DNA from: Chrysemys picta bellii
Lineage: Eukaryota
Direction of reading: 5' to 3'
Length of the DNA: 64,000 nucleotides
NCBI RefSeq assembly: GCF_011386835.1
Contig: NC_088807.1
Span: forward strand, 18,910,001 to 18,974,000
Below, piece by piece: positions 105 to 36,936 of the stretch. A model generated the notes under the pieces. The model was not told where the DNA came from and did not search any database. It worked only from the letters and a program-made list of their open reading frames with translations. Position numbers and translations under genes: made by a program. The first letter of the stretch is position 1; each line of letters begins with the position of its first letter.

Positions 105-11706
<11,602 letters not shown>

Positions 11707-19945: not shown

Positions 19946-20114
19946 TGTACCCACACACCCCTCCGCCCACACCATACCTGCAACCCCCTCTGCCCACACC
20001 GTACCCACAATCCCACACTGCATTGTGATGTCATTCTCGCCCCGAGGATTCTCCCTGGTGCCTGGCGCGCAGCAGGGCTGAGAACGGGTAGAACTTGTCA
20101 TGCCGGGCTGCACC

Positions 20115-23100
20115 ATGGCGCTCTTGGCTCCCCTCGTGCTGGGGGCCTGGCTGGCGGCGGGCGCCGGGGGCTGCCTGCAGTGCGACCGGCAGATCCGCAG
20201 CACCCTGGAATCGCTCCGCACCGGCCTGGTGCCCCGGCAGATCCGCGACAGCCGCCTGCGGGCACGGGCCCAGGCCCTGCTGCGCGGCATGGAGGGCGGG
20301 TTCTTCCGCCACTACGCCACCAGCCAGTTCGCGGGCACGGCCGGTAGGGGGCACGGCCCAGGGACCTCTGGGGGGGCACGACTGGGGGTATCCAGCGGGC
20401 ATGGCCTGAGGACAATGCATGGGGGGGGAGCCATAGGGCAAAGGGATGAGGTATGAATCCACCAACACTCCACTGTCCCCTCTGTACCCAACCCCCTCCC
20501 CCCCACACACTGCCCTGGCAGTCAGGGCTGGCCCCAGGGCAGCGCTAGGGGGCGCTGTGCTGCAGGGGGCGGGATGTGGGGTGGGCGCCACAGTCCACCT
20601 GGGGCCGATGTTTTCTCCCCCTCCCAGCTCTGAGCAGCATCAACGCCCTGATCCACCGCGTGAGGCTGACGGCAGCCGGCCTGGAACGAAGCGCCCTAAC
20701 AGGTGACAGCCCCACAGTCCTGCACCCCCAGTGCCCCCCAGTGCCCCCAGCATTCCACAGTCCTGTGCCCCACAGTGCCCCCAGCACCCCACAGCGCCAC
20801 CAGTGCCCCACAGTCCTGCACCCCCAGTGCCACCAGCGCCCCCTGCGCCCCCCCAGTCCTGCACCCCCCAGTGCCACCAGCACCCCACAGCACCACCAGC
20901 GCCCCCCAGTCCCACACCCCACAGCACCACCAGCACCCCAGTGTCCCCCAGTCCTGTGCTCCACAGTGCCCCCAGCACCCCACAGCATCCCCCAGTCCCA
21001 CACCCCACAGCTCCCCCAGCATCCCACAGCACCAGCAGGGCCCCATGGTCCTGCGCCCCACAGTCCTGCACCCCACGGTACCCCACAGCCCCAAGCCCCA
21101 CAGCCCTCCCCCCTCCACCGGAGTCACTTCCCCATCTGTCCCCAGACCAGGCCCTGCTGGACGCGCTGGTCGCTTTCAGGCGCAGAACGACCATGGAGCT
21201 GAAATCGGCTCTGAAGGAACATCAGGCAAAAGGTACCAGCTCCCGGGGTGGGGGTGGGGGGGCTGCCCCTCTGCCCTGGGCCCCTTCCTCCAAACCCCCC
21301 AATCCCCCAGTTCTGGGGGGCCCTTCAGTCACAGTCTGGGGCTACAATCGGTTTTTCTCTCTCTCTCCCCAGCTTGTAACCCCAAAACCTGTGGTAAGTT
21401 GACTTTCCATCGCTGCTCGGGGAATGGGGCAGGGGGCCTGTCCCCCTAGGGGGCGCCGGCCCCGATCTGGCCCGGGGGGAGGAACTGGCTGGTTCGGGGT
21501 CAAGGAATGGGGCGGGGGGGGGCTGGCTGGGGGCCTCACACTTTCCCCCTTCCCAGGCTGGCTCTACTATGACGTCTTCGACTGCACCAGTTGCAGGAAG
21601 GCGAAAGCCGTGTGTCTGAAGCAGCACCACTGCCTTGGTAGGGGGGAGTTGGGGGGCAGGGGGTGGGGGGCAGGGAGAGGTTGGGGGCCATGGGCAGATG
21701 AGCACGATGTCCAGCGAGGCTGTGGGGTGCAGGGTCGGGGGAGGGTATGGGGGCTCCAGGAGGGCCGTGGGGCAGGGAGGGGCATGGAGCTGATGCCCGG
21801 GGGATATCACTGACCCCAGCCCCCCACGTGGGGGAGGGGGAGGGGAGGGGAGGGGGGCAGACAGCAGGTGTGGGGGGTACCCAGGAGGGGCCTTCAGCTC
21901 TGTCAGCTCCTAACCTCCCTCCCCAACACAGTGGACTCCCAGGCCCGGCTCTCCCTGCGGTACCGGCCCCCGGCCCCTGGCCCGGCCATCGCCCGGACCG
22001 GCGTCTCTGTGGTGCTGTGCATGGGTGCCCTGCTCTTCCTGGCGCTGAGCGTCGCGTGAGTGTGAGGAACCCGCGCCCCCCAGAGCCGGCCGCATCCCCA
22101 CACCCCCCAGAGCTGGCCGCATCCTCCGTGTCCCGTCCCCCCCCCCGAGCTGGCGGCATCCCCTGAGACCCCCTCCCAGAGCCAGCTGCATCCCCCGAGA
22201 CCCCCCCAGAGCCACCCTCCCCCGAGCTGCCCGCATCCCCTGAGACCCCCCAGAGCCAGCCGCATCCCCCGTGCCCCCCAGAGCCAGTTGCATCCCTTCA
22301 GACCCCCCAGAGCCGGCTGCATCCCCCGCGCCCCCCAGAGCCAGCTGCATTCCCTGAGACACCCCCCCCAGAGCCGCTGCATCCCCCGCACCCCCCCAGA
22401 GTTGGCCACATCCTCTGTACCCCCGAGAGCCGGCCTCATCCCCCGCGCCCCCCAGAGCTGGCCGCATCCTCCGTGTCCCCCCCCCCGAGCTGGCTGCATC
22501 CCCTAAGACCCCCTCCCAGAGCCAGCTGCATCCCCCGAGACCCCCCAGAGCCACCCTCCCCCGAGCTGCCCGCATCCCCCGTTCCCCCAGAGCCAGTTGC
22601 ATCCCTTCAGACCCCCCAGAGCCAGCTGCATCCCCCGCGCCCCCCAGAGCCGGCCGCATCCCCCACGCCCCCCAGAGCCAGTTGCATCCCATGAGACCCC
22701 CCAGAGCCGTATTCTCTGAGACCCCCCCAGAGCTGGCCGCATCCCCTGAGACCCCCCAGAGCCGGCCGCATCCCCTGAAACCCCCCTGGGCTGGCTGCAT
22801 CCCCTGAGACCCCCCAGAGCCGGCCGCATCCCCCGCGCCCCCCAGAGCCGGCTGCATCCTCCATGCCCCCCCCCCCGGGCTGGCTGCATCCCCTGAGACC
22901 CCCCAGAGCCGGCCACACCCCCTGAGACCCCCCAGAGCCGGCCGCATCCCCTGAAACCCCCCCGAGCCAGCTGCATCCCCTGAGACTCCCCAGAGCCAGC
23001 CACGTCCCCTGAGACCCACCTGAAACTCCCCAGAACCGGCTGCATCCCCAATGGCCCCCCAGAGCCGGCTGCATCCCCCGCACCCCCCCAGAGCCACCTA

Positions 23101-23343
23101 CATTCCCCTCCCCCCAGAGCCAGCTGCATCCCCCGCACCCCCCCCAGAGCCACCTACATTCCCCTCCCCCCAGAGCCGGCTGCATCCCCCGCACCACCCC
23201 CAGAGCCGGCTGCATCCCCTGAGACCCCCAGAACAGCTCCATCCCCCGCAAGCGAGCGATCGCTGTCCAGGCCAGTCTGACTCTGTCTCTCGCCCCCCAG
23301 GGCCGTCACCTACTGGAGGAACCAGCAGTCCCTGAGGCAGTAG
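20115..23343 (+). CDS. IZUMO2: Izumo sperm-egg fusion protein 2 (219 aa; signal peptide, 8-Cys Izumo domain, TM)
   Basis: Exons 20115-20343, 20628-20702, 21146-21232, 21373-21393, 21557-21637, 21932-22055, 23301-23343, all GT-AG and in frame. GCLQCD...LLRGMEGGFFRHYA...ACNPKTC...VFDCTSC...VDSQARLSLRY...TYWRN matches recalled human IZUMO2 motifs. Kozak caccATGg; an in-frame upstream ATG at 20100; ATTAAA at 23495-23500. Confidence 0.9.
20705..21110. repeat. C-rich degenerate VNTR in IZUMO2 intron 2
   Basis: ccccacagtcctg / cccccagtgcc units. Confidence 0.8.
22070..23250. repeat. Long CCCCAGAGCCGGCTGCATCCCC VNTR in IZUMO2 intron 6
   Basis: Dozens of ~25-30-bp degenerate units; source of the long Gly-rich spurious ORFs. 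Confidence 0.9.
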
Positions 23344-23785
23344 CGCCCACACACGCACCCCGACCTGGGCCCGGCACCCGCCTGGGGACAGGGCTGGAAG
23401 GATGCTGGAGCCGCCGAGGTGGAGATCGCAGGCAGGAGGCGCTAGCTCCAGCCCCCAGCCCCCAGATCTCAGACCCCTCCTACCCCAGCTTGAAATTAAA
23501 CACAGACAACAAGGTTTTGGGTAGGGCCCTGGCTTCCAGCCCTCACCCCCTTCCCCGCTCTAACCACTAGACCCCACTCCCCTCCCAGAGCCGGGGAGAG
23601 AACCCAGGAGTCCTGGCTCCCAGCCCCCCAGCTCTAACCACTAGCCCCCACTCCCAGTGAGGAATTATGTACAAACTACACCAGTATTTTATTTCCAGGC
23701 TTACACTGGGGAAGCCATGGGGCCTGGCATGCCCAGGTGGGGGAGGGGCTGGGTCCTGCTGCCCCCTTGTCAGTCCCTCACCTGG

Positions 23786-26700
23786 CTAACACGCCAGCCA
23801 CCTGCCCTGTCCGGCCCAGGCCCTGTCCTCCAGCCACCTGCGGTGTCGGCAGCACACGCAGTACCTAGGGGAGAGCGGCTGTCAGGGTCTGCCCCCTGCC
23901 CTCACCCCCGGACTCCTGGGGTCTCTCCCTGGCTCTGGGAGGGGAGTGGGGTCTAGTGGGTAGAGCAGGGGGCTGGGAGCCAGGACTCCTGGGTTCTCTC
24001 CCTGGCTCTGGGAGGGGAGTGGGGTCTAGTGGGTAGAGCAGGGGGGTGCTGGGAGCCAGGACTCCTGGGTTCTATCCCTGGCTCTGGGAGGGCTGTTCAG
24101 ATTCTCACTGAGTGCTGGGTGGGGTCACCCCACTTTCAGTATCTGCGATGAGCCCAGAGGGGTAGAGGTCCCCAGAATCTGCCTCAGTTAGGGGTGATCC
24201 GAGGTTTTTGGGTGCATGGGGGCGGGGATGCCGTGAAGATGAAGGGGGAAAATATGGGTGTTGGGCATCAGAGGTAGGGAACGTGGGGTACCCAGGGCAG
24301 CCCCCCATCCTGAGCCACTCTATCCCAGCAGGGCACTCACAGCAGGGCGGCCGAGGCCAGCAGCACGGACTGGCAGACCAGGAAGAGATAGAGGGTGATT
24401 TCCTTCCTCTCCGCATCCCGCGGGTCCTCCTCTGGGGACAGAAAGGGGGTGAGCCCCAAGCCCCCCCCACAGCCCCCCACACCTCCACCCCACTGACCAG
24501 CAGACCCCTGGTTCCCCCCAGTACCCCACACCCCCTGCCACCCCCCAGGCTCCCATTCACCCCACTGTCCCCCAACCCCCAGTACCCCACACCCCCTGCT
24601 AACCCCGTTCACCCCACTACCCATCAGCTCCCCTGTCCTCCCCACCCCCATCTGCCCCCCACTGCCCAGCCCCCCACCCCAACCCCACGGCAGCAGCTAC
24701 CTCCGCAGAGCTCCCCGTCGAAGCACTGGGCATTGATGCGAAGGCAGGTCCAGCAGTCGAGAACTGGTCCCTCTGTAACCGCTGGGATGTGGAAAGGGGG
24801 GACCAGGTCAGGGACCCACGGGGAGACCCCGCCGTGCCCTGCAGGGGGTGCCAGCTCCCACCTGACCCCAGGGAGCAGGGAATGGGGCAGGGGGCCTTTC
24901 CCCTCAAGGGGGCGCCAGCTCCCACCCGGCCCCAGGGCAGGGACTGGTTGGCTCAGGGAGCAGGGAACGGGGCACGGGGCCTATCCCCTCCAGGGGGCGC
25001 TGGCAGGGGACTGTGGGTAGGCACCAGGGGGCCACACTCACTGCAGTCCTCGGAGCAGGCTGTGGGGGAAGCACAGACAGACACAGCGTTAGAGACCCTC
25101 TCTCATGGGGCACTCCTTGCCCCCCACGTCCCTCAGAGCCCCCCACCGCCCGCCCATCACCCAGAGGGCCCTACCCTGATCTCAGGGACGCTGGACCCAG
25201 ATCTCCCCGCTCCGCCCCCAATGCTGCTTGCGTCTCATGCGGCTGGAGATGGGGGGGTCCCTGGCTGTCGCATGGGGGGTGGGAGGGTGTCACGGAGTAT
25301 TGGGGAACTCAGGGCCCTGCACCCCCGGCTTCCTGCGATTCACCATGACTCTCAGCCAGCCAGTAAAGCAGAAGGTTTATTTGGATGACAGGAATACAGT
25401 CCAAGACAGGTCTTGCAGGCACAGACAACAGGGCCCCCCTCAGTTAGGTCCAGCTTGGGGTCCCAGGGCATTCCAGCCCAGCCCCCCTTGGGAGGTCAGA
25501 GCCATCTCTGCCTCCCAGCCATCTCTCCAGCCTCCTTCCAGCCTGCTTCCAGCACTCTGCCTTCAGCGACCCCTCCCACAGCCTTTGTTCAGTTTCCCGG
25601 GCCCCGGAGTCATCTGACCTCCAACCCCCTCCTGGGTTCTCATGTTACAAGCTCAGGTATGTTCCCTTGGGCCGGCTCCCATCCCCCGATGCAGACCATC
25701 CTAGTCACACTCCCCTGTCAGCATTCACACACCCCAGCAAGAACAGTCCCAGTTCGTCACATCTCTCCCCCCTTCGAGACCGAACTGAGCAGGGTCACTT
25801 TAGCCAGTGACCCGGGGAAGTTCGAACCTACCCCCGTTCCCATGGATGCCCCCGCATCCCTCCAGTTCCTTGGTGAGAATTACACCAGGCCCCTTCCGTT
25901 CCACGCCCCCCCTTAGGTCGGGGGTGCTTGATGGCACTCGCAGTTCGCATGTGGGAAGGTTTATGCGGCCTGTGCCCTTTCCCCACCCCCATACCTCTGG
26001 GGTTCCAACTGGGCTGTGGTCTTCTCCCAGCGCTCCAGTCTGGAGGTCTGTGCTTTGGGCTCTCTTGGTTTAGAGCCGCCCTTTTAACCTTGGCCACCCT
26101 CTGGAAAGGATCCTTTATGCTGGGCAAGGGTCCTAAAGCTCTTTTCCCCTTGTCCCAGGCCTTCCTCCCCCTCTGACAGGGGTCACAGGATCCGCAGTAC
26201 TGTCGGACAGTAACAAAGACCCCAGGCCAGTAAAAGCTCCGTAGCAGCCTCTGCTGGGTACGCCAGGTTCCCTGGTGCCCTGAGAGGGGAATGTCATGGG
26301 CCCGGCACAGCAGCTGGCGGCGATACTTCTGGGGTACCACCAGCTGCCTCCTGATCCCCCCTGACTCCATTTTCCCTGGGGGAGCCCATTCTCGGTACAG
26401 GAACCCCTTCTCCCACAGGAACCTTTTCCGGCCACCTCGTCCCATGGTCTGTACCGCATTGAGGTCGGCCAGGTCCCTTATCTTCCGCAAGGAGGGATCT
26501 CTCTGTAACTCGGCCTGGAACTCAGCAGCTGGGACAGGGATGGCCACCTGCTCTTTCTCGCCCGCTGGGTCCGAAGCTGCAGCCTCCCTGCGCCGTGTCC
26601 CTGGGCGTTCCCTCCCCACCAGGTTAGGGTCCTGCGCCTCAGGCAAGGCACCCCCCCCAAGGCCAGGGCGCAGTGCCCCTCGCCGGCTCTGACTGCGGGT

Positions 26701-29700
26701 CACAACTAAGGCGGTCTGGGGGCTGCTTGGCCAGTCCTCTAGGTCCCCCCCCATCAACACCTCAGTGGGCAAATGGTGGTGCACTCCCACGTCCTTGGGG
26801 CCCTCCTTGGCCCCCCATTTCAGGTGTACCCTCGCTACGGGAACCTTGAATGGGGTCCCGCCCACCCCGGTCAGGGTCAGGAAGGTGTTGGGCACCACCC
26901 GATCTGGGGCCACCACCTCGGGCCGGGCCAGTGTCACCTCTGCGCCCGTGTCCCAGTATCCATAAACTTTCTTCCCATCCACCTCCAGGGGAACAAGGCA
27001 CTCGCTCCGCAGGGACAGCCCCGCGCCAACCCTGTAAACGGAGAACTTTGAATCCGGAGCATCTGGCCCCCCAGAGAAGCTGGCCTGGGGCCCTTCTCTC
27101 TCTTGAGCAGTTGATAAGCTGCCAGCCCCTCTTGCGTTAGAAGCCTGCCCCTCGTCCGTCTGGGCCTCTACCAAGTTAACCCGGTGCGGGTTCGGTCTGC
27201 TCAGTCTGTCCTTGAGCTTGGGGCACTGGGCCCGAACGTGGCCTCTTCGGCCGCAGTAATAGCAGCTCAGGTCCCGTGGGTCCCCTCGAGCCGGTCGGTT
27301 GTCCCTGACGCTGGGCATTCCCCGTGGGAGGGGATTCCCCATATTCCCCCTTTGGGAGGTCCCAGGGTGACTCTCTCTCTGCATCGCGGCGGGCCTGTTC
27401 CTTTGGGGCTCCTCCCTGCCACCCCCTGACCGGCTCTTTACAAACTCATCAGCCAGCTGCCCGGCGTGTCGCGGGTTCTCTGGCTTTCTGTCCACCAACC
27501 ACAGCCTCAGGTCGGATGGGCACCGCTCATACAGTTGCTCCAGTACCAGCAGTTTAATCAGGTCCTCCTTCGTCTGGGCCCCACCAGCCCACTTGCTGGC
27601 GTATCTTTCCATGCGGGCGGCTAGTTGCAGATATGAGATCTCAGGGGTTTTATCCTGACTCCGGAACCTTTCCCGGTACATCTCAGGAGTCAGCCCAAAC
27701 TCTCGTAGCAGGGCCTTTTTGAATAGTTCGTAGTCCCCTTTCTCTGCCTCTCCCAGTTGGCGGTACAATGCCACGGATTTGGGGTCCAGTAAGGGGGTAA
27801 GGACCCGGAGTCTGTCCGCGGGATCCACCCGGTGCAGCTCGCAGGCCGTCTCAAAGGCCTCCAGGAAGTCATCCATGTCCTCCCCCTCCTTGTATGGGGC
27901 CATGATGCACTTATCAAAGCCCCGTGCAGTCCTGGGTCCCCCCTCACTCACCGCAGCCGGGGGTTCGCTGCCCTTCAATCTCGCCAGTTCCAGGTCATGC
28001 TGACGCTGTCTCTCATTCTCCTGTCTCTGTCTCTCTTTTTCCTCCCGTTCACGCTGATGCTGTCTCTCATTCTCCTCCCGTTCATGCTGTCTCTGTCTCT
28101 CTTCACGCTGATGCTGTCTCTCTTTCTCCTCCCGTTCACGCTGATGCTGTCTCTCATTCTCCTCCCGTTCATGCTGTCTCTGTTGTTCACGATCCTCCAG
28201 CTCCCTCAGTTTTAGCTCTTTCTCCCATTCCAGCCAATTCCGCTCCCCGGATGCCGAACGTCGCCGGGAGGATCCTCTGCTGGCCGGCGAGCTTCGCCGG
28301 GGGGACCCCCTGCTGGCCGGGGGGGTCACGGCGCCTTCGGTATTTGCTGGGCTCCTCCCCACCCTTCCCCTAGGCATAGGAAGGAGGGGTCTCGGGAAGC
28401 CCTCAGCAGCGGGCTGACCACTCCCAGCTGGGACAGACACTGGTGCCTGCGCTGCATTTGCCAGGCTGCTTCCCTGAGACACAGGGATCAGTTCATTCGC
28501 GCGATCTTCCGCCTCCAGCTGGGCAATGAGCTGTTCTTTGGTGAGCCTCCCAATGCGCAGCCGCCTCTGCTTGCACAGCTCCACCAGGTCGCTCTTAAGC
28601 CGCTTGGCATACATCTTCCTGCTGGCCACTCACCGGCCTGTGTGCTCACAGCTCCCCACAGTTCCCAGGGGGCCCCCTAGTGTGCCAGCCCTTCTCGAGG
28701 TCACCGCCTCTCCGCCAGGGTCGAGCTGCAGACTCCTCCGCCCCTGGGACCACTCGCTGCGATCCCCCCGGGGGACCCTGTTACTGCAAAAGTCCTTCTC
28801 GCTGGTCACACACTCCCAGGGGTAATAACCGTCTCTCTCCCACTCTTCAGCAGGCCTGGTTCCCGTCCATCCCCCTTCGTTTTACTGCTCCCCAGTCACT
28901 TACTGCAGGAAGCGCCGTCCACGGGGTGCAGTAGATCCCACCGCTGCCACCAGTTGTCACGGAGTATTGGGGAACTCAGGGCCCTGCACCCCCGGCTTCC
29001 TGCGATTCACCATGACTCTCAGCCAGCCAGTAAAGCAGAAGGTTTATTTGGATGACAGGAATACAGTCCAAGACAGGTCTTGCAGGCACAGACAACAGGG
29101 CCCCCCTCAGTTAGGTCCAGCTTGGGGTCCCAGGGCATGCCAGCCCACCCCCTTGGGGGGTCAGAGCCATCTCTGCCTCCCAGCCATCTCTCCAGCCTCC
29201 TTCCAGCCTGCTTCCAGCACTCTGCCTTCAGCGACCCCTCCCACAGCCTTTGTTCAGTTTCCCGGGCCCCGGAGTCATCTGACCTCCAACCCCCTCCTGG
29301 GTTCTCATGTTACAAGCTCAGGTATGTTCCCTTGGGCCGGCTCCCATCCCCCGATGCAGACCATCCTAGTCACACTCCCCTGTCAGCATTCACACACCCC
29401 AGCAAGAACAGTCCCAGTTCGTCACAGAGGGGTGTGGGGGGAGCCCCCCATCTCCGGGGGCACGTACCCAAGTCGGCGAAGCTCTCCATGGCCTCTCGGA
29501 GGCGGGTTCGCAGGGAGTCGCGGTGCTGGGCCAGCGTCAGCTGCAGCAGGTGAACCCCTGGGGGACAGGCAGACATTGCTGGGGGGCAGCCGGCCCCACG
29601 CGCACCTGGCACCCCTCCCCCAATGCCAGCCGAGATGCCGGGCACCTGTCATGTGGTCCACACCCCCTTCCGGAGACCCACAGCCCCACTCCCGCCCCCC

Positions 29701-30447
29701 ACCTCCCAGCCACTGCCGGCTCCTGCCCAGCATCCCTGCCCCCCGGGAACTCCAGCCCTGCCCCCCCCAGCCTGGGCCACTCTCAGCCCCGCCAGATCCA
29801 CCCCCCCACACACACACACACCTTTCCAAGGCGTCTCCTTGAGAGCCCTCAGCCAGCTGCTCAGAGCAGTTTTCACAGCCAGCATCCCGCGGACATCTGT
29901 ACAGGGAACCAAGGGGTCAAAGGGGGCACCCTCTGCCCCCCAGCAGCTGTGCCAGTGCTCCTCACTCCCGACCCGCAGCCCCTGCCAGCCCAGCCCTGGG
30001 CTCCCCCCATAGCTCTGCCGCTGCCCCTCACTCCCGACCCACAGCCCCCTGCTAGCCCGGCCCTTTCCCCCCACCCCAGCCCTGCCGGTGCCCCTCACTC
30101 CCGACCCGCAGCCCCTGCTAGCCCGGCCCTGGGCTCCCTGCTACCCAGCTTTGCCAGTGCCCCTCACTCCCAACCCGAAGCCCCCTGCTGTCCCAGCCCA
30201 GGTGCCCCCGGGGGAGGGGCCGCACACCCAGCACCCGGTGGTGTTTCTCTGGCAGGTGGGTGCTGTAGAGGCGCTCAAAGGCCTGGACCTGGCGTTGAAT
30301 TAGGGCATCCCGGTTGGGCACTTCAGAGGGCACCGCCTCCCCCAGCAGCACCCCCAGCCCCCGCAGGAAGGGCCGGTCGCAGTGCAGGCAGCCGCCCGCC
30401 CCCCGGGGGCGCAGCAGCAGCAGGAGGAGCAGGAGAGAGCAGGACAT
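23786..30447 (-). CDS. IZUMO3: Izumo sperm-egg fusion protein 3 (217 aa; signal peptide, Izumo domain, TM)
   Basis: Exons 30447-30228, 29896-29822, 29557-29468, 25059-25042, 24781-24701, 24431-24341, 23864-23786. GCLHCD...[11 protein letters not shown]...[37 protein letters not shown] match recalled human IZUMO3 ([33 protein letters not shown]). AATAAA on minus at 23688-23693. The last exon is less certain. Confidence 0.88.
25288..25761 (-). mobile_element. 3' LTR (474 bp), preceded by polypurine tract AAGGGGGGAGAGA (25774-25762)
   Basis: By eye it differs from the 5' LTR only by ~2 substitutions and a 2-bp indel, all in one ~25-bp patch. Confidence 0.95.
25828..28629 (-). CDS. 933-aa retrotransposon polyprotein: SAP/HeH-like N-terminus, coiled-coil repeats, SCAN-like capsid, CCHC knuckle, aspartic protease, integrase H2C2 zinc finger; no integrase core, RT or RNase H
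   Basis: Motifs [19 protein letters not shown]; [17 protein letters not shown]; [14 protein letters not shown]; WDTGAEVTL; [24 protein letters not shown]. Confidence 0.9.
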   Translation of the reverse strand: MASRKMYAKRLKSDLVELCKQRRLRIGRLTKEQLIAQLEAEDRANELIPVSQGSSLANAAQAPVSVPAGSGQPAAEGFPRPLLPMPRGRVGRSPANTEGAVTPPASRGSPRRSSPASRGSSRRRSASGERNWLEWEKELKLRELEDREQQRQHEREENERQHQREREEKERQHQREERQRQHEREENERQHQREREEKERQRQENERQRQHDLELARLKGSEPPAAVSEGGPRTARGFDKCIMAPYKEGEDMDDFLEAFETACELHRVDPADRLRVLTPLLDPKSVALYRQLGEAEKGDYELFKKALLREFGLTPEMYRERFRSQDKTPEISYLQLAARMERYASKWAGGAQTKEDLIKLLVLEQLYERCPSDLRLWLVDRKPENPRHAGQLADEFVKSRSGGGREEPQRNRPAAMQRESHPGTSQRGNMGNPLPRGMPSVRDNRPARGDPRDLSCYYCGRRGHVRAQCPKLKDRLSRPNPHRVNLVEAQTDEGQASNARGAGSLSTAQEREGPQASFSGGPDAPDSKFSVYRVGAGLSLRSECLVPLEVDGKKVYGYWDTGAEVTLARPEVVAPDRVVPNTFLTLTGVGGTPFKVPVARVHLKWGAKEGPKDVGVHHHLPTEVLMGGDLEDWPSSPQTALVVTRSQSRRGALRPGLGGGALPEAQDPNLVGRERPGTRRREAAASDPAGEKEQVAIPVPAAEFQAELQRDPSLRKIRDLADLNAVQTMGRGGRKRFLWEKGFLYREWAPPGKMESGGIRRQLVVPQKYRRQLLCRAHDIPLSGHQGTWRTQQRLLRSFYWPGVFVTVRQYCGSCDPCQRGRKAWDKGKRALGPLPSIKDPFQRVAKVKRAALNQESPKHRPPDWSAGRRPQPSWNPRGMGVGKGHRPHKPSHMRTASAIKHPRPKGGRGTEGAWCNSHQGTGGMRGHPWERG
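28935..28952 (-). other. Primer-binding site complementary to the 3' end of tRNA-Leu (AAG/TAG type)
   Basis: Plus strand ATCCCACCGCTGCCACCA equals the recalled 3'-terminal 18 nt (with CCA) of vertebrate tRNA-Leu-AAG/TAG, 2 nt from the 5' LTR. Confidence 0.85.
28955..29426 (-). mobile_element. 5' LTR (472 bp)
   Basis: Direct repeat of 25288-25761. AATAAA on minus near 29042-29047. Confidence 0.95.
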
Positions 30448-30669
30448 GGCCACAGATCCCCGGCCCCGCTGTGACCTCATCGGCCTGGTGACATCACAGA
30501 GCCAGAGGGGCAGAGTGTTCCCTGGGCGGGGAGGAAATGACATCATAGGCAGAAGAGTGGGTTAGAAGGTGTTGGCTGCAACACAAGAAATGATGTCACA
30601 AACAGAACTGGGGTCTAATGAGAGGAGTGGGTGTAGAACAGGAAGTGATGTCAGAGGCAGAAGAGGCAG

Positions 30670-31333
30670 TGTGACAAAGTGGGAATGTTCTTAATGTTTT
30701 CTCTGAATACTGTGTGGGTGCCTCAGTTTCCCCTATGCATTTCTTAACTATCTAGGGTGGTGGGAGAAGGGGGTGTGGTTGTTGCAGAGCCCTAGAGGGC
30801 CAGTGCGATGGTGTCTGCACAGAGAATGGCCAACACCCTGTCTCCTGGCAACTGATGGCCTGGGGCCCTCCCCTGCAAGTGCCAACTGAAGGTGTTGGAG
30901 AACAAAGAGATCAGGTGACCTCCTGGCCCGGGAAAGAGCCGAGGGGCTGGAGAGTTTCAGTTTGAGCTGGCTGGGGAAAGAGAGGCCTCAAGATGGACCT
31001 GACTTAGGGGTCCAGTTTCTGTACCTACAAGCTCTGTTTTGGACCGTGTTCCTCTCGTCTAATAAACCTTCTGTTTTAGTGGCTGGCTGAGAGTCACGTC
31101 TGACTGCGGAGTCGGGGGGCAGGGCCCTCTGGCTTCCCCAGGACCCCGCCTGGGTGGACTCGCTGTGGGAAGCGCACGGGGGGACGGGGATGCTGAATGC
31201 TCCGGGGTCAGACCCAGGAAGGTGGAAGCTGTGGAGGCTTCTTGCCCTGGAGACAGTCGGCTCCGAGAGAGGAGGCTCCCCCGAGTCCTGCCTGGCTTCA
31301 TATGGAGCAAGTCCAGAGCCTCGCCCGGGGACA
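30670..31333 (+). mobile_element. Solo LTR of a related Gypsy family
   Basis: Starts TGTGACA, ends ...GGGGACA. Contains AATAAACCTTCTGTTTTAGTGGCTGGCTGAGAGTCAC, similar to the LTR above. Imperfect 5-bp flanks GGCAG/GGCGG. Confidence 0.7.
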
Positions 31334-31619
31334 GGCGGCTAAAAGAAGAAGTGGCGGCACAACAAGAGATGATGTCAGAAGCAGAACAGGCATCTAGTGG
31401 GAGGAGCGGATGTAGAACAGGAAGTGATGTCAGGGGCAGAAGTTAGGGCTAAAGAAGAATTGAAGGCAATCAGGAACTGATGTCGAAGGCAGAATGGGAG
31501 GTGATGTTCGCAGCAGAAGAGGGGCTTAGAAAGGATTGGAGACAGAACAGGAAGTGATGTCAGAAGCAGGAAAGGGGCCCAGAGGTGGACTGAGGCAGAA
31601 TGGGAAGTGATGCAGGATT

Positions 31620-32037
31620 GCCAACCCTTGACCTTGATCTCCATCCCCCTGCACCAGGCGATGCCCTGTTCCCGCGGGCAGAGTCCCCTGGGTCCCAGCC
31701 GTGGCCCTGGGGCAGCAGGAGGAAGGGCCGGTTTGAGACACAAACCAGTTCTAGGGAGCTGGCTGGAGAACTTCATTCGAATTCTCATGCGCTCATCAAC
31801 TCATGGATGGTGGTGATGGGCTCGTTTCTGGGTGTGGGTCCCGAGTGAAACCTGTTGAGTTAAACTGCCTGTTGAAACACTTCGCGAGCAATTATTGAAT
31901 ATATTGAATATAACAACAGTAGCAGTGAAGGTTTGTTGAAAGTGAAGGGGAAAGTGCAGCCATTGAACGTGTCGGGGGAAACTGAGGCACACACGGGCTT
32001 AGTACAAATATTACAGAAAATCCCCCCCTTTGTCACA
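31620..32037 (-). mobile_element. LTR-like fragment, inverted relative to 30670-31333
   Basis: The minus strand from 32037 reads TGTGACAAAG...GTGTGCCTCAGTTTCCCC, resembling the start of the solo LTR. Left boundary uncertain. Confidence 0.5.
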
Positions 32038-32280
32038 GGAGATCTGAGGAAAACTGGGATGTGATGTCAGCGGCAGAAGAGGAAGTGATGTCAGACGTAG
32101 AAGAAGGGGCTAAAGAAGAATTGAGGCACAAGAAGAAGTGATGTCAGTGGCGGAATAGGAAGTGATGTCAGAAGTGGCACAGACCTTTATGGCAGGACTG
32201 GAGGCAGAACAGGAAGTGATGTCAGAGGCAGGAAGGATTAGAAGAGAACAGGAAGTGAGGTCATAGTGGTTGCCGGGGCG

Positions 32281-35200
32281 ATGCTGGTGCTGGTGGTGTT
32301 GGTGCTGCCCCTGCTGGCCCCGGGCGCCGCCCCCTGCCTGCGCTGCTGGCCGGACGCCCCCCGCTACGTCCACTACGACGTGCGGCTGCTGCTGGGGGCA
32401 GCGCAGCCCGGGGGGGCCGCGTGGCTGGAGAGGGAGCTGAGTGCGCTCATCTTGGGGGGGGACCACGGCGTCCACCTCATGGGTGAGGGGTGGGGCATGG
32501 GGCCCCCCACAAACACCCCCCTGGCCCACCTGTCACAGCACCCCCTGCCCTGCCCCCCATGGCGTCCCCCACTGAGACCCCTCCCACCAACTCCCTCCTG
32601 GTGACCCCTGCTGAGCCCCCCGATTCCCCCATAACAGCTTCTGACGAGCCCCCCCCACTCCCTGCTCCCATAGCTCCCCCCTCCCCACAGCCCAGCGCCC
32701 CCTGCTGACCCCCTGCCCCCCTCCCCGCAGCCCAGCGCCCCCTGCTGACCCCCGACCCCCGCCTCCTCCCTGCAGCCCAGCGCCCCCTGCTGAGCCCACA
32801 GCCCCACAGCCCAGCGCCCCCTGCTGACCCCCTGCCCCACCCCCTGCAGCCCAGCACCCCCTGCTGAGCCCCCGACCCTGCTCCCTGCAGCCCAGCGCCC
32901 CCTGCTGAGCCCCCCGCCCCACCCCCTGCAGCCCAGCACCCCCTGCTGAGCCCACAGCCCCACAGCCCACAGCCCAGTGCCCCCTGCTGACTCCCTGCCC
33001 CCCTCCTTGCAGCCCAGCGCCCCCTGCTGACCCCCTGCCCCCCTCCCCGAAACCCAGCGCCCCCTGCTGACCCCCTGCTCCCCTCCCCGCAGCCCAGCGC
33101 CCCCGCTAAGCCCTCGACCCTGCTCCCTGCATCCCAGCGCCCCCTGCTGACCCCCTGACCCCTGCCTCCTCCCTGCAGCCCAGTACCCCCTGCTGACCCC
33201 CTGCCCCCCTCCCCGCAGCCCAGCGCCCCCACTAAGCCCCCGACCTTGCTCCCTGCAGCCCAGCGCCCCCTGCTGACCCCCTGACCCCCGCCTCCTCCCT
33301 GTAGCCCAGCGCCCCCTGCTGAGCCCCCCCACCCCACCCCCTACAGCCCAGCGCCCCCTGCTGAGCCCACAGCCCCGCGCCCCCTGCTGATTCCCTGCCC
33401 CCCTCCTTGCAGCCCAGCGCCCCCTGCCAAGCCCCTGCCCCGCTCCCCGCAGCACAGCACCTCCTTGAGTCAGGACGAGGGGCATGGTGGGTGCTGCAGG
33501 CGCTGACGGGCAGCAAACCTCACCTCTGTCCGTCTGTCCGGCCGCAGAACGGGAGCGCCTGGAGCGAGAAGCCGGGAAGCTCTTCTATCGCCTGGACCAG
33601 ATCATCAACCGCAACCGGCAGGGTGAGCGCCAGGGGCCCAGCCCCAACTCCGCCTGCCCTGTCTGCCCCGCGCGGAGGGAGCAGCAAACCCCATGATGGA
33701 TCAGGGCTTGCCTTTCCCTCCCAGAGCCAGGGAGAGGACCCAGGAGTCCGGGCTACCAGCCCCCCCACCCTGCTCCCGTAACTAAGGGATGACAAGAAGT
33801 TGGGACTTTTTCCCCTTTTGACCTGAGCCATTAGCCGAAATTCACGGTCTTGTGGCCCGTTGCCAATCAGAGGAGAAATCGAGCCCTAGATTCTAAGGCC
33901 AGTGGGGATGGTCTGATCGTCTGGCCGGACCCGTCCCCCCCGCTAGCACAGGCCAGCACCCTGCCCCCAACCCCCTCACGCTGAGCCCAGCGGCCTGGGT
34001 TAGACCGAACCGGGGCTGGAGGTGCAGCCAGGTACCTTTGGGACGATCCCCTTTTGTCAGTCGCATCCTGGCCCCCTTGCAACTCGAGCACCAGCCGGGG
34101 AGGGAGAAGGGCCCTTGGCCCCCGAACACCGCAGGAGACGGGCCCTTTGCTCACAATCCCGCGCCTCCTCCCACGCAGCCCCGTGCCCAAAAGCTCTCCC
34201 GGGCGGTTTGTTCTCTCATGCGCCGGGGTTTCCATCGGGGTCTTCATCGCCATCTTCGCCCACGTCTCTCTCCCCCTCCCCTAATGTATGACCCTGTCCA
34301 GCCCCGGCAGTGGCCACGGGGCAGACCCCACCGTTGGGACGGGGTGGGGATGTTCCCATCGCTGGAGGGATTCCACCTCCCTGTGGGACATCGCCGGACG
34401 CCGTCTCCTACCCGCGTCTACCCCAGGGGCTAGGTTGGCCCAGCCCCGGCACACACAGGGGGTGGGGGGAGCGACATCACCTTGAGTTTTAACCATGGCC
34501 CGTGCTCCAGTGGCCTCGTATGGGCGGGTCAGCTCCGGGCCGAGCACGGCGCTTCCTTCCCAGCTGTGCGCGGGGGCCGGGCATGGCCCAAATAAGGCGT
34601 GCGACACCCAGCGCCCTCCACCCCCAACTCCTCCCCTGCCCCGCTCCCCACAGCCAACGCCCCTCCCCCACTTCTGCCCCGCAGATCCAGTGCGCCTGAT
34701 GAAAGAGGCAGCGCTTGAAAAGCAGAACTTCACCCAGCGCCTGAGAGCAGCATCGGCAGCCGTCCGGCAGCAAGGTACCCGCCATGCCCGCCTGCTGCCC
34801 GAGCTGGTGCCCCTCACTCCCGACCCGCAGCCCCTGCCAGCCCAGCCCTGGGCTCCCCCAGCTCTGCCAGTGCCCCTCACTCCCGATCTGCAGCCCCTGC
34901 TAGCCCAGCCCTGGAATCTGCCCCCCCAGTCTCTGCCGGTGCCCCTCACTCCCGACCCGCAGCCCCTGCTAGCCCAGCCCTGCCCCCCCCAGCTCTGCCG
35001 GTGCCCCTCACTCCCGATCTGCAGCCCCTGCTAGCCCAGCCCTGGAATCTGCCCCCCCAATCTCTGCCGGTGCCCCTCATTCCCAACCCGCAGCCCCTGC
35101 CAGCCCAGCCCTGGGCTTCCCCAGCTCTGCCAATGCCCCTCACTCCTGACTTGCAGCCCCTGCCAGCCCAACCCTGCCACCCCCCAGCTCTGCCGGTGCC

Positions 35201-36936
35201 CCTCACTCCCAACCCGCAGCCCCTGCTAGCCCAGCCCTGCCCCCCCCAGCTCTGCCGGTGCCCCTCACTCCCAACCCACAGTTAGCCCAGCCCCGGGCTC
35301 TGCCCCTGCACCCAGCTCTGCCAGTGCCCCTCACTCCTGGGTTCTCTTCCCACTCTGGGGGGGGCAGGGAGCCCGGATTCCTGGGTTCCATCCTGGCTGG
35401 GGGGGGCAGAAGGCTTGCGGGGAGCTGGATTAGGGGCCGGGGCCGTTCTGCCTGCGCTGATCCGTGTCTCTCTCCCCACAGTGTGCAGCGCGTCCTGTGG
35501 TGAGTCCGTCTGTCCATCCGGCTGCCTCCCGGGGGGTGGGGGGCTGCAGCCCCCGCAACACGAACCTACCGCTCGCGCCCTGGGCCGGCCCCCAAGTGGG
35601 GCCGTATCCACCCCCGCAACGCTGCCCCCTGGGGAGGGGCCCCCAGGAATGTGCGGGGCTGGGACGGCTCCCCTGGGGGTGTTTCTCTAATGGGGTCCCC
35701 CCCAACAGGCCGGTCCGAGCCCTTCGATTTGTCCGAGTGCGACAGCTGTGAACGCCTCCAAGCTCGATGCAGGGACCAGAGGGTCTGCGCAGGTAACCCC
35801 TGACACCCCCCAAGCCCCAACACTCCTCCACACCCCCGAACTCCAACACCCCCAGCCACCGAACCCCGACACCCCCAGCCCCCCAAACTCTGACACCCCT
35901 CCACCCCCCTGCACCCCCCATTGGCCACCAAACCCCTCACAGCAGCTCCCCCGAATCCCAGCATCCTCCACAGCCCCCTGAACTCCCCCAACCCTTTTTC
36001 CAGTCTTCCCCCCACCCCCCATTCACCCTCTAGTACCCCCCATGGCCTCTTCTAGTTCCATCTCCCTCCAGCCCCCAAACCTCAGCACCCCCCTGAACTC
36101 TCCCCATCACCCTCCCAAACCATTCATCCCCCTCCACGACCCCCCAACCCACAGCCCCCTTCCCGCCCCACACCCAGCCCAGCCCCCTAACTTCTGCCCC
36201 CTCTCTCCCCCCAGGCGCTGCCGTGATCCTGGCTGTGGGGCTGACCCTGGGGGGGCTGGTGCTGGGAGCCGCAGTGGGGTGAGTGGGGATCAGACAGAGG
36301 CGGGCGGCAGAGAGGGAAGTGGGACCCAGGCGTCCTTGAGAAGAGAATGGAGATGGGCCCCGATCCAACTCTAGGGCTGGGGGCTGGCTGGGAGGGAGAG
36401 GGATGGGGAATGCGGCCACTCCCATCTAGGGGGCACTGGTTCCGGTCTGGAGCGGTGGGGCCTGGCTGGCTGCGGGAGTGGGATGGAGCCACTCCTCTAG
36501 GGGGCACTGGCTCTGGGCAGGGGCGGAGGGGGCGTGGGGTTGACTGGGAGGCACCAGCCTGAGACCCCGGCCCGGGGACAGGGCCTTCCTTTGTTATAGG
36601 CGGCGAGCAAGGCCGGCGGCAGGCAGGACGGAGCCCCCCGCGGACCTGGGGAATGGGGCCCCCGCGGAGCAAGGGGCCGGGGCCCCCACGGAGCTGGGGA
36701 ATGGGGCTCCCGCGGAGCAAGGGGCCGGGGCCCCCCACGGAGCTGGGGAATGGGGCCCCCGCGGAGCAAGGGGCCGGGACCCCCACAGACATGGGGAATG
36801 GGGCCCCTGCAGAGCAAGGGGCCGGGACCCCCACAGACATGGGGAATGGGGCCCCCGCGGAGCAAGGGGCCGGGACCGTGACTCATTAAATGTTGGTGTC
36901 TTTTCCCATCCCGGCTTTTCTGGAGAATGTGACTGA
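32281..36936 (+). CDS. Unassigned IZUMO-family single-pass membrane protein (signal peptide, 8-Cys Izumo domain, no Ig domain, TM, repeat-rich cytoplasmic tail)
   Basis: Exons 32281-32482, 33548-33622, 34685-34774, 35482-35499, 35709-35792, 36215-36278, 36600-stop, all GT-AG. Cys pattern CLRC / CSASC / CDSC / C / C; sizes and phases match IZUMO2/3. Stop is 36936 as assembled, or 36889 if one C in the C6 run at 36731-36736 is removed. Confidence 0.85.
32680..33430. repeat. CAGCCCAGCGCCCCCTGCTGA VNTR in intron 1 of the IZUMO paralogue
   Basis: Many degenerate units. Confidence 0.9.
34805..35340. repeat. GTGCCCCTCACTCCCGACCCGCAGCCCCTGCTAGCCCAGCCCTG tandem repeat (dispersed family)
   Basis: About 8 units; the same family appears at ~29960-30200, ~14090-14190, ~12480-12560. 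Confidence 0.85.
36643..36880 (+). repeat. Coding 48-bp repeat x5 ((D/E)(L/M)GNGAPAEQGAG(A/T)PT) in the last exon of the IZUMO paralogue
   Basis: Five units visible; the second is 49 bp. Confidence 0.85.

What the first reader, a model, noticed from the sequence alone, without database searches (positions are those of the whole stretch)
20100..36936. Compact three-gene IZUMO cluster (IZUMO2 -> <- IZUMO3, <- -> unnamed paralogue)
Seen: three genes with the same exon phases (1,1,1,1,1,2) and near-identical internal exon sizes (75; 87-90; 18-21; 81-84 nt) within 17 kb. Known (recalled): human IZUMO2 neighbours MYH14 on chr19, while IZUMO3 is isolated on chr9. Inference: this is the ancestral tandem array from which IZUMO3 was relocated in mammals. 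It shows an expanded set of Ig-less Izumo proteins in a lineage where the mammalian receptor JUNO is not expected, suggesting an uncharacterised reptile gamete-recognition module.
Basis: partly seen in the sequence, partly recalled or inferred. Interest (0 to 1): 0.7.

Follow-up and report, generated by a model that had tools for sequence, protein, structure and literature searches.

The report
Turtle IZUMO2–IZUMO3–TEX51 sperm gene cluster

Summary
Between 20100 and 36936 lie three intact seven-exon genes with GT-AG introns in phases 1,1,1,1,1,2. Internal exon sizes are 75/87/21/81, 75/90/18/81 and 75/90/18/84 nt.

- **Gene A (+):** IZUMO2, next to a MYH14-type myosin exon, as in mouse.
- **Gene B (-):** the gene annotated IZUMO3 in at least ten turtle species.
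- **Gene C (+):** not an unnamed paralogue. It is the orthologue of TEX51 (testis-expressed protein 51). All 20 named hits of a search of 1.84 billion proteins are TEX51, and it nests in a TEX51 clade (support 100/97) whose branching follows the species tree.

TEX51 was placed in the IZUMO1/SPACA6/TMEM95 superfamily by structure in 2025. IZUMO2–IZUMO3 adjacency in reptiles was published in 2015.

What I could not find in the TEX51 papers I read is that TEX51 lies head-to-head with IZUMO3 and shares the Izumo exon architecture. That argues it is a fifth Izumo paralogue made by tandem duplication, later scattered in mammals (chromosomes 19, 9 and 2 in human).

The "expanded reptile gamete-recognition module" reading is not supported. 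Mammals have the same genes, and mouse knockouts of Izumo3 and Tex51 affect the acrosome and sperm head, not gamete binding.

Other notes of this scan flagged gene C and its promoter on this same stretch.

The parts
20100..23343 (+). Gene A = IZUMO2 orthologue, 7 coding exons (20100-20343, 20628-20702, 21146-21232, 21373-21393, 21557-21637, 21932-22055, 23301-23343), 224 aa: signal peptide, Izumo domain, TM helix
   Evidence: Pfam IZUMO on the exon-1 ORF, 30.1 bits against a cut-off of 25. Turtle and alligator IZUMO2 proteins map to each exon. Exact model. IZUMO2 clade 99/98.
23786..30447 (-). Gene B = IZUMO3 orthologue, 7 coding exons (30447-30228, 29896-29822, 29557-29468, 25059-25042, 24781-24701, 24431-24341, 23864-23786), 217 aa; tail-to-tail with IZUMO2, stop codons 442 nt apart
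   Evidence: Pfam IZUMO on the exon-1 ORF, 26 bits. The Chelonia orthologue P0018 scores 100.8 bits over the whole domain. Turtle IZUMO3 proteins map to the exons. Model, clade 100/99, Atlas nearest clusters named IZUMO3.
25288..29426 (-). Young LTR retroelement inside IZUMO3 intron 3, in the same orientation as the gene. LTRs at 25288-25761 and 28955-29426. One 933-aa ORF (25828-28629) with a SCAN-like capsid, zinc knuckle and integrase zinc finger. The interior is only 3.2 kb and no reverse-transcriptase match was found.
   Evidence: LTRs 99.2% identical, TG..CA ends, 5-bp target duplication GAGGG. Pfam domains of the ORF.
30448..32280 (.). 1.83-kb head-to-head spacer between the IZUMO3 and TEX51 start codons, carrying 9 copies of an ETS plus CRE-like composite motif, all on the + strand, six of them within 225 nt upstream of the TEX51 ATG
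   Evidence: Ten matches in the window, nine of them here, against 0.11 expected. An RNA-like contig with an adapter remnant starts at 32255.
32281..36936 (+). Gene C = TEX51 orthologue, 7 coding exons (32281-32482, 33548-33622, 34685-34774, 35482-35499, 35709-35792, 36215-36278, 36582-36936 in the literal frame; stop at 36887-36889 if the C6 run 36731-36736 is really C5). It has a signal peptide, an Izumo-type four-helix bundle with hairpin, a TM helix and a repeat-rich cytoplasmic tail.
   Evidence: The orthologue search returned only TEX51. Clade 100/97. Spliced contigs give joints 32481>33547, 33621>34684, 34772>35480, 35789>36212 and 36277>36581. Fold Z 11.5 to IZUMO1. hhalign 94-96% to IZUMO2/3.
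2852..4105 (-). Left flank: exon of a myosin-II heavy chain (MYH14-type) inside this ORF
   Evidence: Pfam Myosin_head, 3.6e-9, profile positions 175-206.
49789..50292 (-). Right flank: ENTH-domain exon of an epsin (EPN1-type); a UIM-like stretch lies near 46887-46943
   Evidence: Pfam ENTH, 4e-23. The UIM-like peptide turned up as a chance tblastn row.

Best explanation
The block is a conserved turtle cluster of three old paralogues of the Izumo-domain family, in the order MYH14 | IZUMO2 -> <- IZUMO3 <- -> TEX51 | ... EPN1.

Each gene encodes a small type-I membrane protein with these parts:
- a signal peptide;
- a four-helix bundle tied to a beta-hairpin by two CXXC motifs, with eight cysteines in a fixed spacing;
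- one transmembrane helix and a short tail;
- no Ig domain.

The three genes share an exon-by-exon architecture, so they arose by tandem duplication of one ancestral gene. Because each has its own mammalian orthologue, the duplications predate the amniote ancestor. Turtles kept the array. In mammals IZUMO2 stayed beside MYH14, while IZUMO3 and TEX51 moved to other chromosomes.

Shown here: gene models, family and orthologue assignments, the fold of the TEX51-type protein, transcription and splicing of gene C, and co-residence of the genes in other turtles.

Inferred from mouse work: expression in spermatids and a role in acrosome and sperm-head formation, not in egg binding. Also inferred: because every internal exon is phase 1-1, any of them can be skipped in frame, which accounts for the many annotated isoforms that lack exactly one or two exons.
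For: - **Gene models:** three intact ORFs with identical phases and near-identical exon sizes.
- **Cysteine pattern:** the same in all three, CXXC...C-x3/4-C-x9/10-CXXC-x6-C-x5-C.
- **Paralogue similarity:** Izumo-domain identity 25-30%, z 6-8 against shuffles. hhalign gives TEX51 vs IZUMO2 96.3% (E 1.5e-9), TEX51 vs IZUMO3 94.3% (1e-7), IZUMO3 vs IZUMO2 91.4% (9e-7).
- **Gene C identity:** phmmer of its Chelonia orthologue against 1.84 billion representatives gave 24 hits; all 20 I looked up are TEX51 or TEX51-like, from monotremes, marsupials, eutherians, squamates and Pelodiscus.
- **Tree:** three clades, each with support of 99 or more; gene C groups with turtle and squamate TEX51, sister to mammalian TEX51.
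- **Fold of the Chelonia TEX51-like protein:** four helices, a hairpin and a TM helix. VIA Z is 11.5 to IZUMO1 over 132 residues, 9.7 to SPACA6 and 7.9 to TMEM95; the next unrelated chain scores 6.4.
- **Transcription:** spliced RNA-like contigs confirm five of gene C's six introns.
- **Other turtles:** Natator IZUMO2, IZUMO3 and the TEX51-like protein are all on contigs of one length (23.6 Mb), so very probably one contig, and the IZUMO3 and TEX51-like accessions are three apart. Caretta IZUMO3 and IZUMO2 have consecutive accessions. Gopherus, Chelonia and Pelodiscus IZUMO3 and TEX51 share a contig length.
- **Literature:** reptile Izumo2/3 adjacency (PMC4807442); Myh14-Izumo2 in mouse (PMC12270595); IZUMO3 at 9p21.3 (PMC12932537); TEX51 on human chr2 and mouse chr18 and its membership of the IZUMO1/SPACA6/TMEM95 (IST) superfamily (PMC12615630).
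Against: - I had no mammalian IZUMO2, IZUMO3, IZUMO4 or IZUMO1 sequences. Orthology of gene B to mammalian IZUMO3 therefore rests on NCBI names, an Atlas look-alike (0.95) and the published phylogeny, not on a tree made here.
- No synteny could be checked outside turtles, so "ancestral array" is parsimony, not demonstration.
- Pfam IZUMO does not reach its cut-off on turtle TEX51 (16.6 bits against 25), and nothing hit gene C exon 1 alone.
- Sequence profiles of TEX51 and IZUMO3 found no IZUMO1 chain in the PDB.
- The tissue of the RNA-like runs is coded, and their RNA status is only a guess of the tool.
- Function in turtles is untested.
Confidence: 0.85

Rival explanations
1. One reading: gene C is an unnamed, reptile-specific extra Izumo paralogue, and the three genes form an expanded gamete-recognition module of reptiles.
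For: Chelonia and Natator annotate the gene only as an uncharacterised LOC, and Gopherus as 'RpfA-like'. Pfam finds nothing in exon 1. The repeat tail is peculiar to sauropsids.
Against: Every named relative is TEX51, including mouse NP_001357798 and both monotremes. The TEX51 clade has 100/97 support and its topology follows the species tree. Mammals therefore have the same gene set. [quoted passage not shown]
Confidence: 0.03
2. The genes are old paralogues, but their adjacency in turtles is secondary. Dispersed genes were brought together, or only IZUMO2/IZUMO3 are ancestrally linked and TEX51 moved in later.
For: No non-turtle synteny was tested here. The region is GC-rich, repeat-rich and carries a recent retroelement insertion, so it is dynamic.
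Against: Three paralogues with the same exon plan lying within 17 kb are what tandem duplication leaves. Independent convergence of relatives on one spot is far less likely. The linkage is shared by sea turtles, a tortoise and a softshell, and MYH14-IZUMO2 is shared with mouse (PMC12270595).
Confidence: 0.1
3. Assembly artefact: the block is mis-scaffolded, or one of the copies is a collapsed or duplicated assembly error.
For: The DNA is 60-70% GC with many minisatellites. There is one probable homopolymer-length discrepancy at 36731-36736.
Against: There are no Ns in 20100-36936. The three genes are only 25-30% identical, so they are not duplicates of one another. The same genes co-reside on contigs of five other turtle assemblies. 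Spliced contigs from independent runs match gene C.
Confidence: 0.02

Closest known systems
TEX51 (testis-expressed protein 51), IST-superfamily member described in mouse and human (Commun Biol 2025, PMC12615630; Andrology 2025, PMC12917576)
   Same: Gene C is its orthologue. It has a signal peptide, a four-helix bundle, a beta-hairpin, two CXXC motifs, one TM helix and no Ig domain. The gene is compact (about 4.7 kb here; mouse knockouts deleted about 4.2-4.5 kb). Hamster isoforms lack exactly the 30-aa and 6-aa segments that are exons 3 and 4 here.
   Different: The turtle protein has a long cytoplasmic tail of 16-aa repeats that is absent from mammals. In turtles the gene lies head-to-head with IZUMO3 next to IZUMO2, whereas human TEX51 is on chromosome 2, away from any IZUMO gene.
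IZUMO2 and IZUMO3 of mammals and reptiles (Ellerman 2009 family; Grayson 2015, PMC4807442)
   Same: They have the Izumo domain with eight cysteines and four helices, a TM anchor and no Ig domain. IZUMO2 sits beside MYH14 as in mouse. Grayson reported IZUMO2/IZUMO3 adjacent on reptilian contigs, as seen here.
   Different: Human IZUMO3 sits alone at 9p21.3. Here it is wedged between IZUMO2 and TEX51 and carries a young LTR element in intron 3.
IZUMO1, SPACA6 and TMEM95 (solved structures 5JK9, 7TA2, 7UX0)
   Same: The predicted turtle TEX51 ectodomain superposes on the four-helix bundle and hinge of IZUMO1 (Z 11.5, 132 residues), SPACA6 (9.7) and TMEM95 (7.9).
   Different: There is no Ig-like domain, unlike IZUMO1 and SPACA6. 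Sequence identity is only 11-14%. There is no evidence of egg binding or a fusion role.

Membership tests
Izumo domain family (Pfam PF15005) | Match to the Pfam IZUMO profile above its gathering score (25 bits) | tested here: met
   Met for genes A and B. Gene A exon-1 ORF scores 30.1 bits and gene B exon-1 ORF 26.0 bits. Orthologues score 100.8 bits (P0018, IZUMO3) and 57.2 bits (P0003, IZUMO2).
Izumo domain family (Pfam PF15005) | The same Pfam match for gene C (TEX51) | tested here: inconclusive
   There was no hit on exon 1 or on isoform P0020. The full-length orthologue P0021 scores 16.6 bits, E 0.013, below the cut-off. Eight of 24 TEX51 proteins match at E<=1, the best at 3.4e-7. Profile-profile comparison gives 94-96% probability.
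Izumo domain / IST superfamily | Eight conserved cysteines including a pair of CXXC motifs | tested here: met
   The spacing in A, B and C is CXXC ... C-x4/3/3-C-x9/9/10-CXXC-x6-C-x5-C. The eight-cysteine definition is quoted in PMC3432370 and the CXXC pair in PMC12615630.
IST superfamily (IZUMO1-SPACA6-TMEM95) | [quoted passage not shown] | tested here: met
   Tested for the gene C orthologue only. The AlphaFold2 model has helices 24-39, 43-58, 69-89 and 94-124 and strands 134-138 and 143-147, with pLDDT 80-93 across them. The top 16 Foldseek PDB hits are all IZUMO1, TMEM95 or SPACA6. VIA Z is 11.5, 9.7 and 7.9 against 6.4 for the best unrelated chain. Genes A and B were not folded.
IZUMO1 / SPACA6 subtype | Ig-like domain between the hinge and the TM helix | tested here: not met
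   The hydrophobic TM segment follows soon after the last domain cysteine in all three models, leaving no room for an Ig domain. No Ig family appears in the Pfam scans.
TEX51 orthologue group | Closest relatives are TEX51, and the gene falls inside a TEX51 clade that follows the species tree | tested here: met
   Search and names. Clade support 100/97, with sauropsid and mammalian halves. The Chelonia orthologue maps only to gene C exons in the window.
TEX51 orthologue group | Shared flanking genes with the mammalian TEX51 locus | not testable with these tools
IZUMO3 orthologue group | Groups with mammalian IZUMO3 in a family tree | not testable with these tools
Indirect support: NCBI names in at least ten turtle species, Atlas nearest clusters named IZUMO3 at 0.95, 0.92 and 0.91 against IZUMO2 at 0.89, and the published reptile Izumo3 phylogeny and synteny (PMC4807442).
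IZUMO2 orthologue group | Adjacent to MYH14, as in mammals | tested here: met
   A myosin-head exon lies on the minus strand at the left edge of the window. The mouse gene order is Kcnc3-Myh14-Izumo2-Zfp473 (PMC12270595). Alligator and turtle IZUMO2 are the best hits.

The most novel reading that the evidence does not exclude
The turtle locus preserves the ancestral amniote array IZUMO2-IZUMO3-TEX51. That would make TEX51 a fifth Izumo gene by descent (tandem duplication), not merely a structural look-alike. IZUMO3 and TEX51 would originally have been driven from one bidirectional, ETS/CRE-rich testis promoter. The divergent lncRNA that starts at the mouse Tex51 promoter (PMC12615630) could then be a remnant of that bidirectional activity.
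Probability: 0.5. Interest if true: 0.45.

Novelty: already known. Interest (0 to 1): 0.33.

Why it matters
The three genes are known and annotated, and two of them were already reported as neighbours in reptiles. The added value is modest and evolutionary.

TEX51 entered the IZUMO1/SPACA6/TMEM95 superfamily in 2025 on predicted structure alone. Its position head-to-head with IZUMO3, together with the same seven-exon, phase 1,1,1,1,1,2 plan down to the 18-21-nt mini-exon that carries two cysteines, is independent genomic evidence of common descent with IZUMO2 and IZUMO3.

This gives a concrete, testable model for how the Ig-less Izumo genes arose and were scattered in mammals. It also corrects "uncharacterised LOC" and "RpfA-like" annotations in several turtle genomes.

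Tried and rejected
- **Pfam on gene C:** exon 1 and the short Chelonia isoform gave no hit.
- **Sequence profiles against PDB chains:** the TEX51 and IZUMO3 profiles gave only transmembrane noise and no IZUMO1. Only the fold comparison linked them.
- **Rfam:** nothing in the window.
- **Neighbouring genes in other species:** I used contig lengths and consecutive accession numbers instead, which is weaker.
- **Fourth Izumo-like copy or pseudogene:** tblastn of the three models found none in the window.
- **Flanks:** Pfam on 20 further long ORFs in 37-62 kb found only the ENTH exon and a HEPN+DnaJ ORF. In 1-20 kb it found only a myosin exon.
- **LTR-like peptide at about 31059-31310:** it is not a copy of the intron-3 LTR at the DNA level.
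- **Frameshifted pseudogene reading for gene C:** rejected, because the shift lies in the cytoplasmic repeat tail at a C6 homopolymer, and one contig from the same species label reads C5.
- **Joined spliced models:** these were not sent to any database, fold or family tool. Those searches used exon references or database orthologues. The joined translations were made only inside the sandbox from the window file, for phase and ORF checks, local tblastn and the tree.


Full report
**What the window is.** The window is GC-rich DNA (60-70%) from a turtle. The best protein matches are Chrysemys picta bellii entries that agree even across read-through intron sequence: P0001 at 100% over 92 aa, and P0007 and P0010 at 99%. 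It is therefore that species or a very close emydid. There are no Ns in 20100-36936.

**Check of the observation.** ORF listing and Pfam flagged Izumo-type first exons at 20100 (+) and 30447 (-). I mapped database orthologues onto the window, read the splice sites and computed exact models. This gives three complete genes, each with seven coding exons, canonical AG/GT sites and intron phases 1,1,1,1,1,2. Sizes of internal exons 2 to 5:

| Gene | Exon 2 | Exon 3 | Exon 4 | Exon 5 |
|---|---|---|---|---|
| A | 75 | 87 | 21 | 81 |
| B | 75 | 90 | 18 | 81 |
| C | 75 | 90 | 18 | 84 |

Even the exon-6 donor is the same GTGAGT, split after the second codon base, in all three. For gene C, contigs of public runs that the tool guesses to be RNA carry GT..AG joints at 32481>33547, 33621>34684, 34772>35480, 35789>36212 and 36277>36581, plus one alternative acceptor at 33412. 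One 393-nt contig runs from exon 3 to exon 7. The model is therefore transcribed and spliced as drawn. Depth was high in two runs of a related species and low in a run with the same species label as the runs that hold this DNA.

**What the three genes are.**
- **Gene A** is IZUMO2. Its relatives are IZUMO2 of Pelodiscus, Alligator sinensis, Mauremys and Natator. It lies next to a myosin-II head exon, just as mouse Izumo2 follows Myh14 (PMC12270595).
- **Gene B** is the gene annotated IZUMO3 in at least ten turtle species. The Chelonia orthologue matches the whole Pfam IZUMO profile at 100.8 bits. Its nearest ESM-Atlas clusters are all named IZUMO3, at 0.95 to 0.91, ahead of IZUMO2 at 0.89.
- **Gene C** had one word-search hit, an uncharacterised Chelonia LOC, and no Pfam hit. 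I therefore spent the exhaustive search on it. Among 1.84 billion representatives there were 24 relatives. All 20 that I looked up are TEX51 or turtle TEX51-like proteins, from mouse, rabbit, cattle, deer, shrew, marmot, opossum, wallaby, platypus, echidna, python, corn snake, cordylid, geckos and Pelodiscus.

In a maximum-likelihood tree the three window genes fall into three clades, each with support of 99 or more. Gene C sits with Chelonia and then the squamates (91/92), sister to a mammalian half with monotremes at its base (95/90). The whole TEX51 clade has 100/97 support. So does its reading of gene C as an unnamed paralogue.

**Is TEX51 really kin of IZUMO2 and IZUMO3?** Several independent lines say yes.
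- The exon architecture is the same in all three genes.
- The cysteine pattern is the same: CXXC ... C-x3/4-C-x9/10-CXXC-x6-C-x5-C.
- Domain identities are 25.7% (A-B), 24.6% (A-C) and 30.0% (B-C), with z of 6 to 8 against shuffles. C is as close to B as A is.
- Profile-profile comparison gives TEX51 vs IZUMO2 96.3% (E 1.5e-9) and vs IZUMO3 94.3% (1e-7). That is no worse than IZUMO3 vs IZUMO2 at 91.4%.
- Eight of 24 TEX51 proteins touch Pfam IZUMO, the best at 3.4e-7.
- An AlphaFold2 model of the Chelonia protein (mean pLDDT 74, and 80-93 over the ectodomain) has four helices, a hairpin and a TM helix. Its 16 best Foldseek PDB hits are all IZUMO1, TMEM95 or SPACA6.
- VIA-align gives Z 11.5 (132 residues, 3.4 Å) to IZUMO1, 9.7 to SPACA6 and 7.9 to TMEM95. 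The best unrelated helical protein scores 6.4.

There is no Ig domain in any of the three.

[quoted passage not shown] TEX51 was placed in the IST superfamily by an AlphaFold search, and the authors noted it is conserved in mammals, lizards, snakes and turtles (PMC12615630). A second group noted the IZUMO1-like fold of mouse TEX51 (PMC12917576). The main TEX51 paper does not contain the words synteny, tandem, duplication or paralog. I found no paper linking TEX51 to the IZUMO2/3 locus, but my search was limited to the open library.

**Conservation of the cluster.** The protein records still help.
- In Natator depressus, IZUMO2, IZUMO3 and the TEX51-like protein all sit on a contig of 23,614,366 nt. 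The IZUMO3 and TEX51-like accessions are three apart.
- In Caretta, IZUMO3 and IZUMO2 have consecutive accessions.
- Gopherus, Chelonia and Pelodiscus have IZUMO3 and TEX51 on contigs of the same length.

The array is therefore shared by sea turtles, a tortoise and a softshell. In mammals the three genes lie on different chromosomes: Izumo2 beside Myh14 (PMC12270595), IZUMO3 at 9p21.3 (PMC12932537), and TEX51 on human chr2 and mouse chr18 (PMC12615630).

**How it most likely works.** The gene products are type-I membrane proteins of the Izumo fold. This is shown by sequence and by a fold prediction. By analogy with mouse they should be made in spermatids. Tex51 loss gives sperm-head, acrosome and flagellum defects, with reduced fertility in one study and normal fertility in another (PMC12615630, PMC12917576). 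Izumo3 loss gives acrosome defects (cited in PMC12615630). [quoted passage not shown] So a role in spermiogenesis is more likely than egg recognition. That is inference, and nothing here tests it in turtles.

All internal exons are phase 1-1, so skipping keeps the frame. Annotated isoforms lack exactly exon 4 (P0011), exon 5 (P0015), exons 3+4 (P0014, P0020, P0024) or exons 4+5 (P0010). Hamster TEX51 isoforms lack exactly the 30-aa or 6-aa segment that corresponds to turtle exons 3 and 4. This also indicates that these two exon boundaries are conserved in mammals.

**Other features of the block.**
- A 4.1-kb LTR retroelement (25288-29426) sits in IZUMO3 intron 3 in the gene's orientation. Its LTRs are 99.2% identical, with TG..CA ends and a 5-bp target duplication. 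It has one 933-aa ORF with capsid-like, zinc-knuckle and integrase zinc-finger matches but no reverse-transcriptase match. It is young and probably a deletion derivative. All seven IZUMO3 exons remain intact.
- The 1.83-kb spacer between the IZUMO3 and TEX51 start codons carries nine + strand copies of GGAAGTGATGTCA-like motifs, against 0.11 expected.
- The TEX51 tail is a 48-nt repeat array. A C6 run at 36731-36736 throws the literal frame out of the repeat. One contig reads C5, which gives a 279-aa protein ending like the sea-turtle one.

**Limits.**
- I had no mammalian IZUMO1-4 sequences.
- I checked no synteny outside turtles.
- The tissue of the runs is unknown.
- Joined spliced models were not sent to any search or fold tool. 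Database orthologues or exon references were used instead.

**Verdict.** It is wrong that the third gene is new or that reptiles have an expanded module. The genes and two-thirds of the linkage are already known. The TEX51 linkage and shared architecture are a small, checkable addition.

Noticed in passing
window 25288-29426: Young LTR retroelement inside IZUMO3 intron 3, in the same orientation as the gene. LTRs are 474 and 472 nt, 99.2% identical, with TG..CA ends and target duplication GAGGG. One 933-aa ORF has a SCAN-like capsid, a zinc knuckle, a DTGA motif and an integrase zinc finger. The interior is only 3.2 kb and no reverse-transcriptase match was found. The RefSeq Chrysemys IZUMO3 model (P0010) skips exons 4 and 5, which flank or follow this insertion.
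   Followed up: partly
window 30641-32263: Nine + strand copies (up to 1 mismatch) of an ETS plus CRE-like composite, GGAAGTGATGTCA, lie in the head-to-head spacer between IZUMO3 and TEX51, against 0.11 expected per window. Six lie within 225 nt upstream of the TEX51 ATG. An RNA-like contig with an adapter remnant begins at 32255. None lies upstream of IZUMO2.
   Followed up: partly
window 36731-36736: A C6 homopolymer in the 48-nt repeat array of the TEX51 tail shifts the literal frame, giving a 295-aa protein with its stop at 36936. One low-depth contig from the species label that holds this DNA reads C5, which keeps the repeat frame and gives 279 aa with a stop at 36887-36889. This is either an assembly error or an allele.
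   Followed up: partly
window 62125-63948 (-): A 607-aa open reading frame with HEPN (1.6e-9) and a weak DnaJ match. This arrangement resembles the C-terminus of sacsin, and it lies beyond the epsin gene.
   Followed up: no
window 22217-23144, 32637-33484, 30004-30200 and 34786-35308: GC-rich minisatellites fill several introns, with periods of 29, 40 and 63-69 nt. The 63-69-nt unit occurs in both IZUMO3 intron 1 and TEX51 intron 3. All four runs laid show deep contig coverage at 34800-35400, so it is a dispersed repeat.
   Followed up: no
proteins P0022, P0047, P0024, P0025, P0033 (alignment A2): Sauropsid TEX51 proteins carry long, species-variable repeat tails after the TM helix. Turtles have 16-aa Gly/Ala/Pro-rich units, with 11 matched stretches in the 405-aa Gopherus protein that NCBI calls 'RpfA-like'. 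Squamates have proline-rich units. Mammalian tails are short.
   Followed up: no
window 31000-31300: Very deep contig coverage in all four runs, with many base differences. This looks like a dispersed repeat in the IZUMO3-TEX51 spacer. Its peptide resembles the start of the intron-3 LTR, but the DNA does not match that LTR at E<1e-5.
   Followed up: partly
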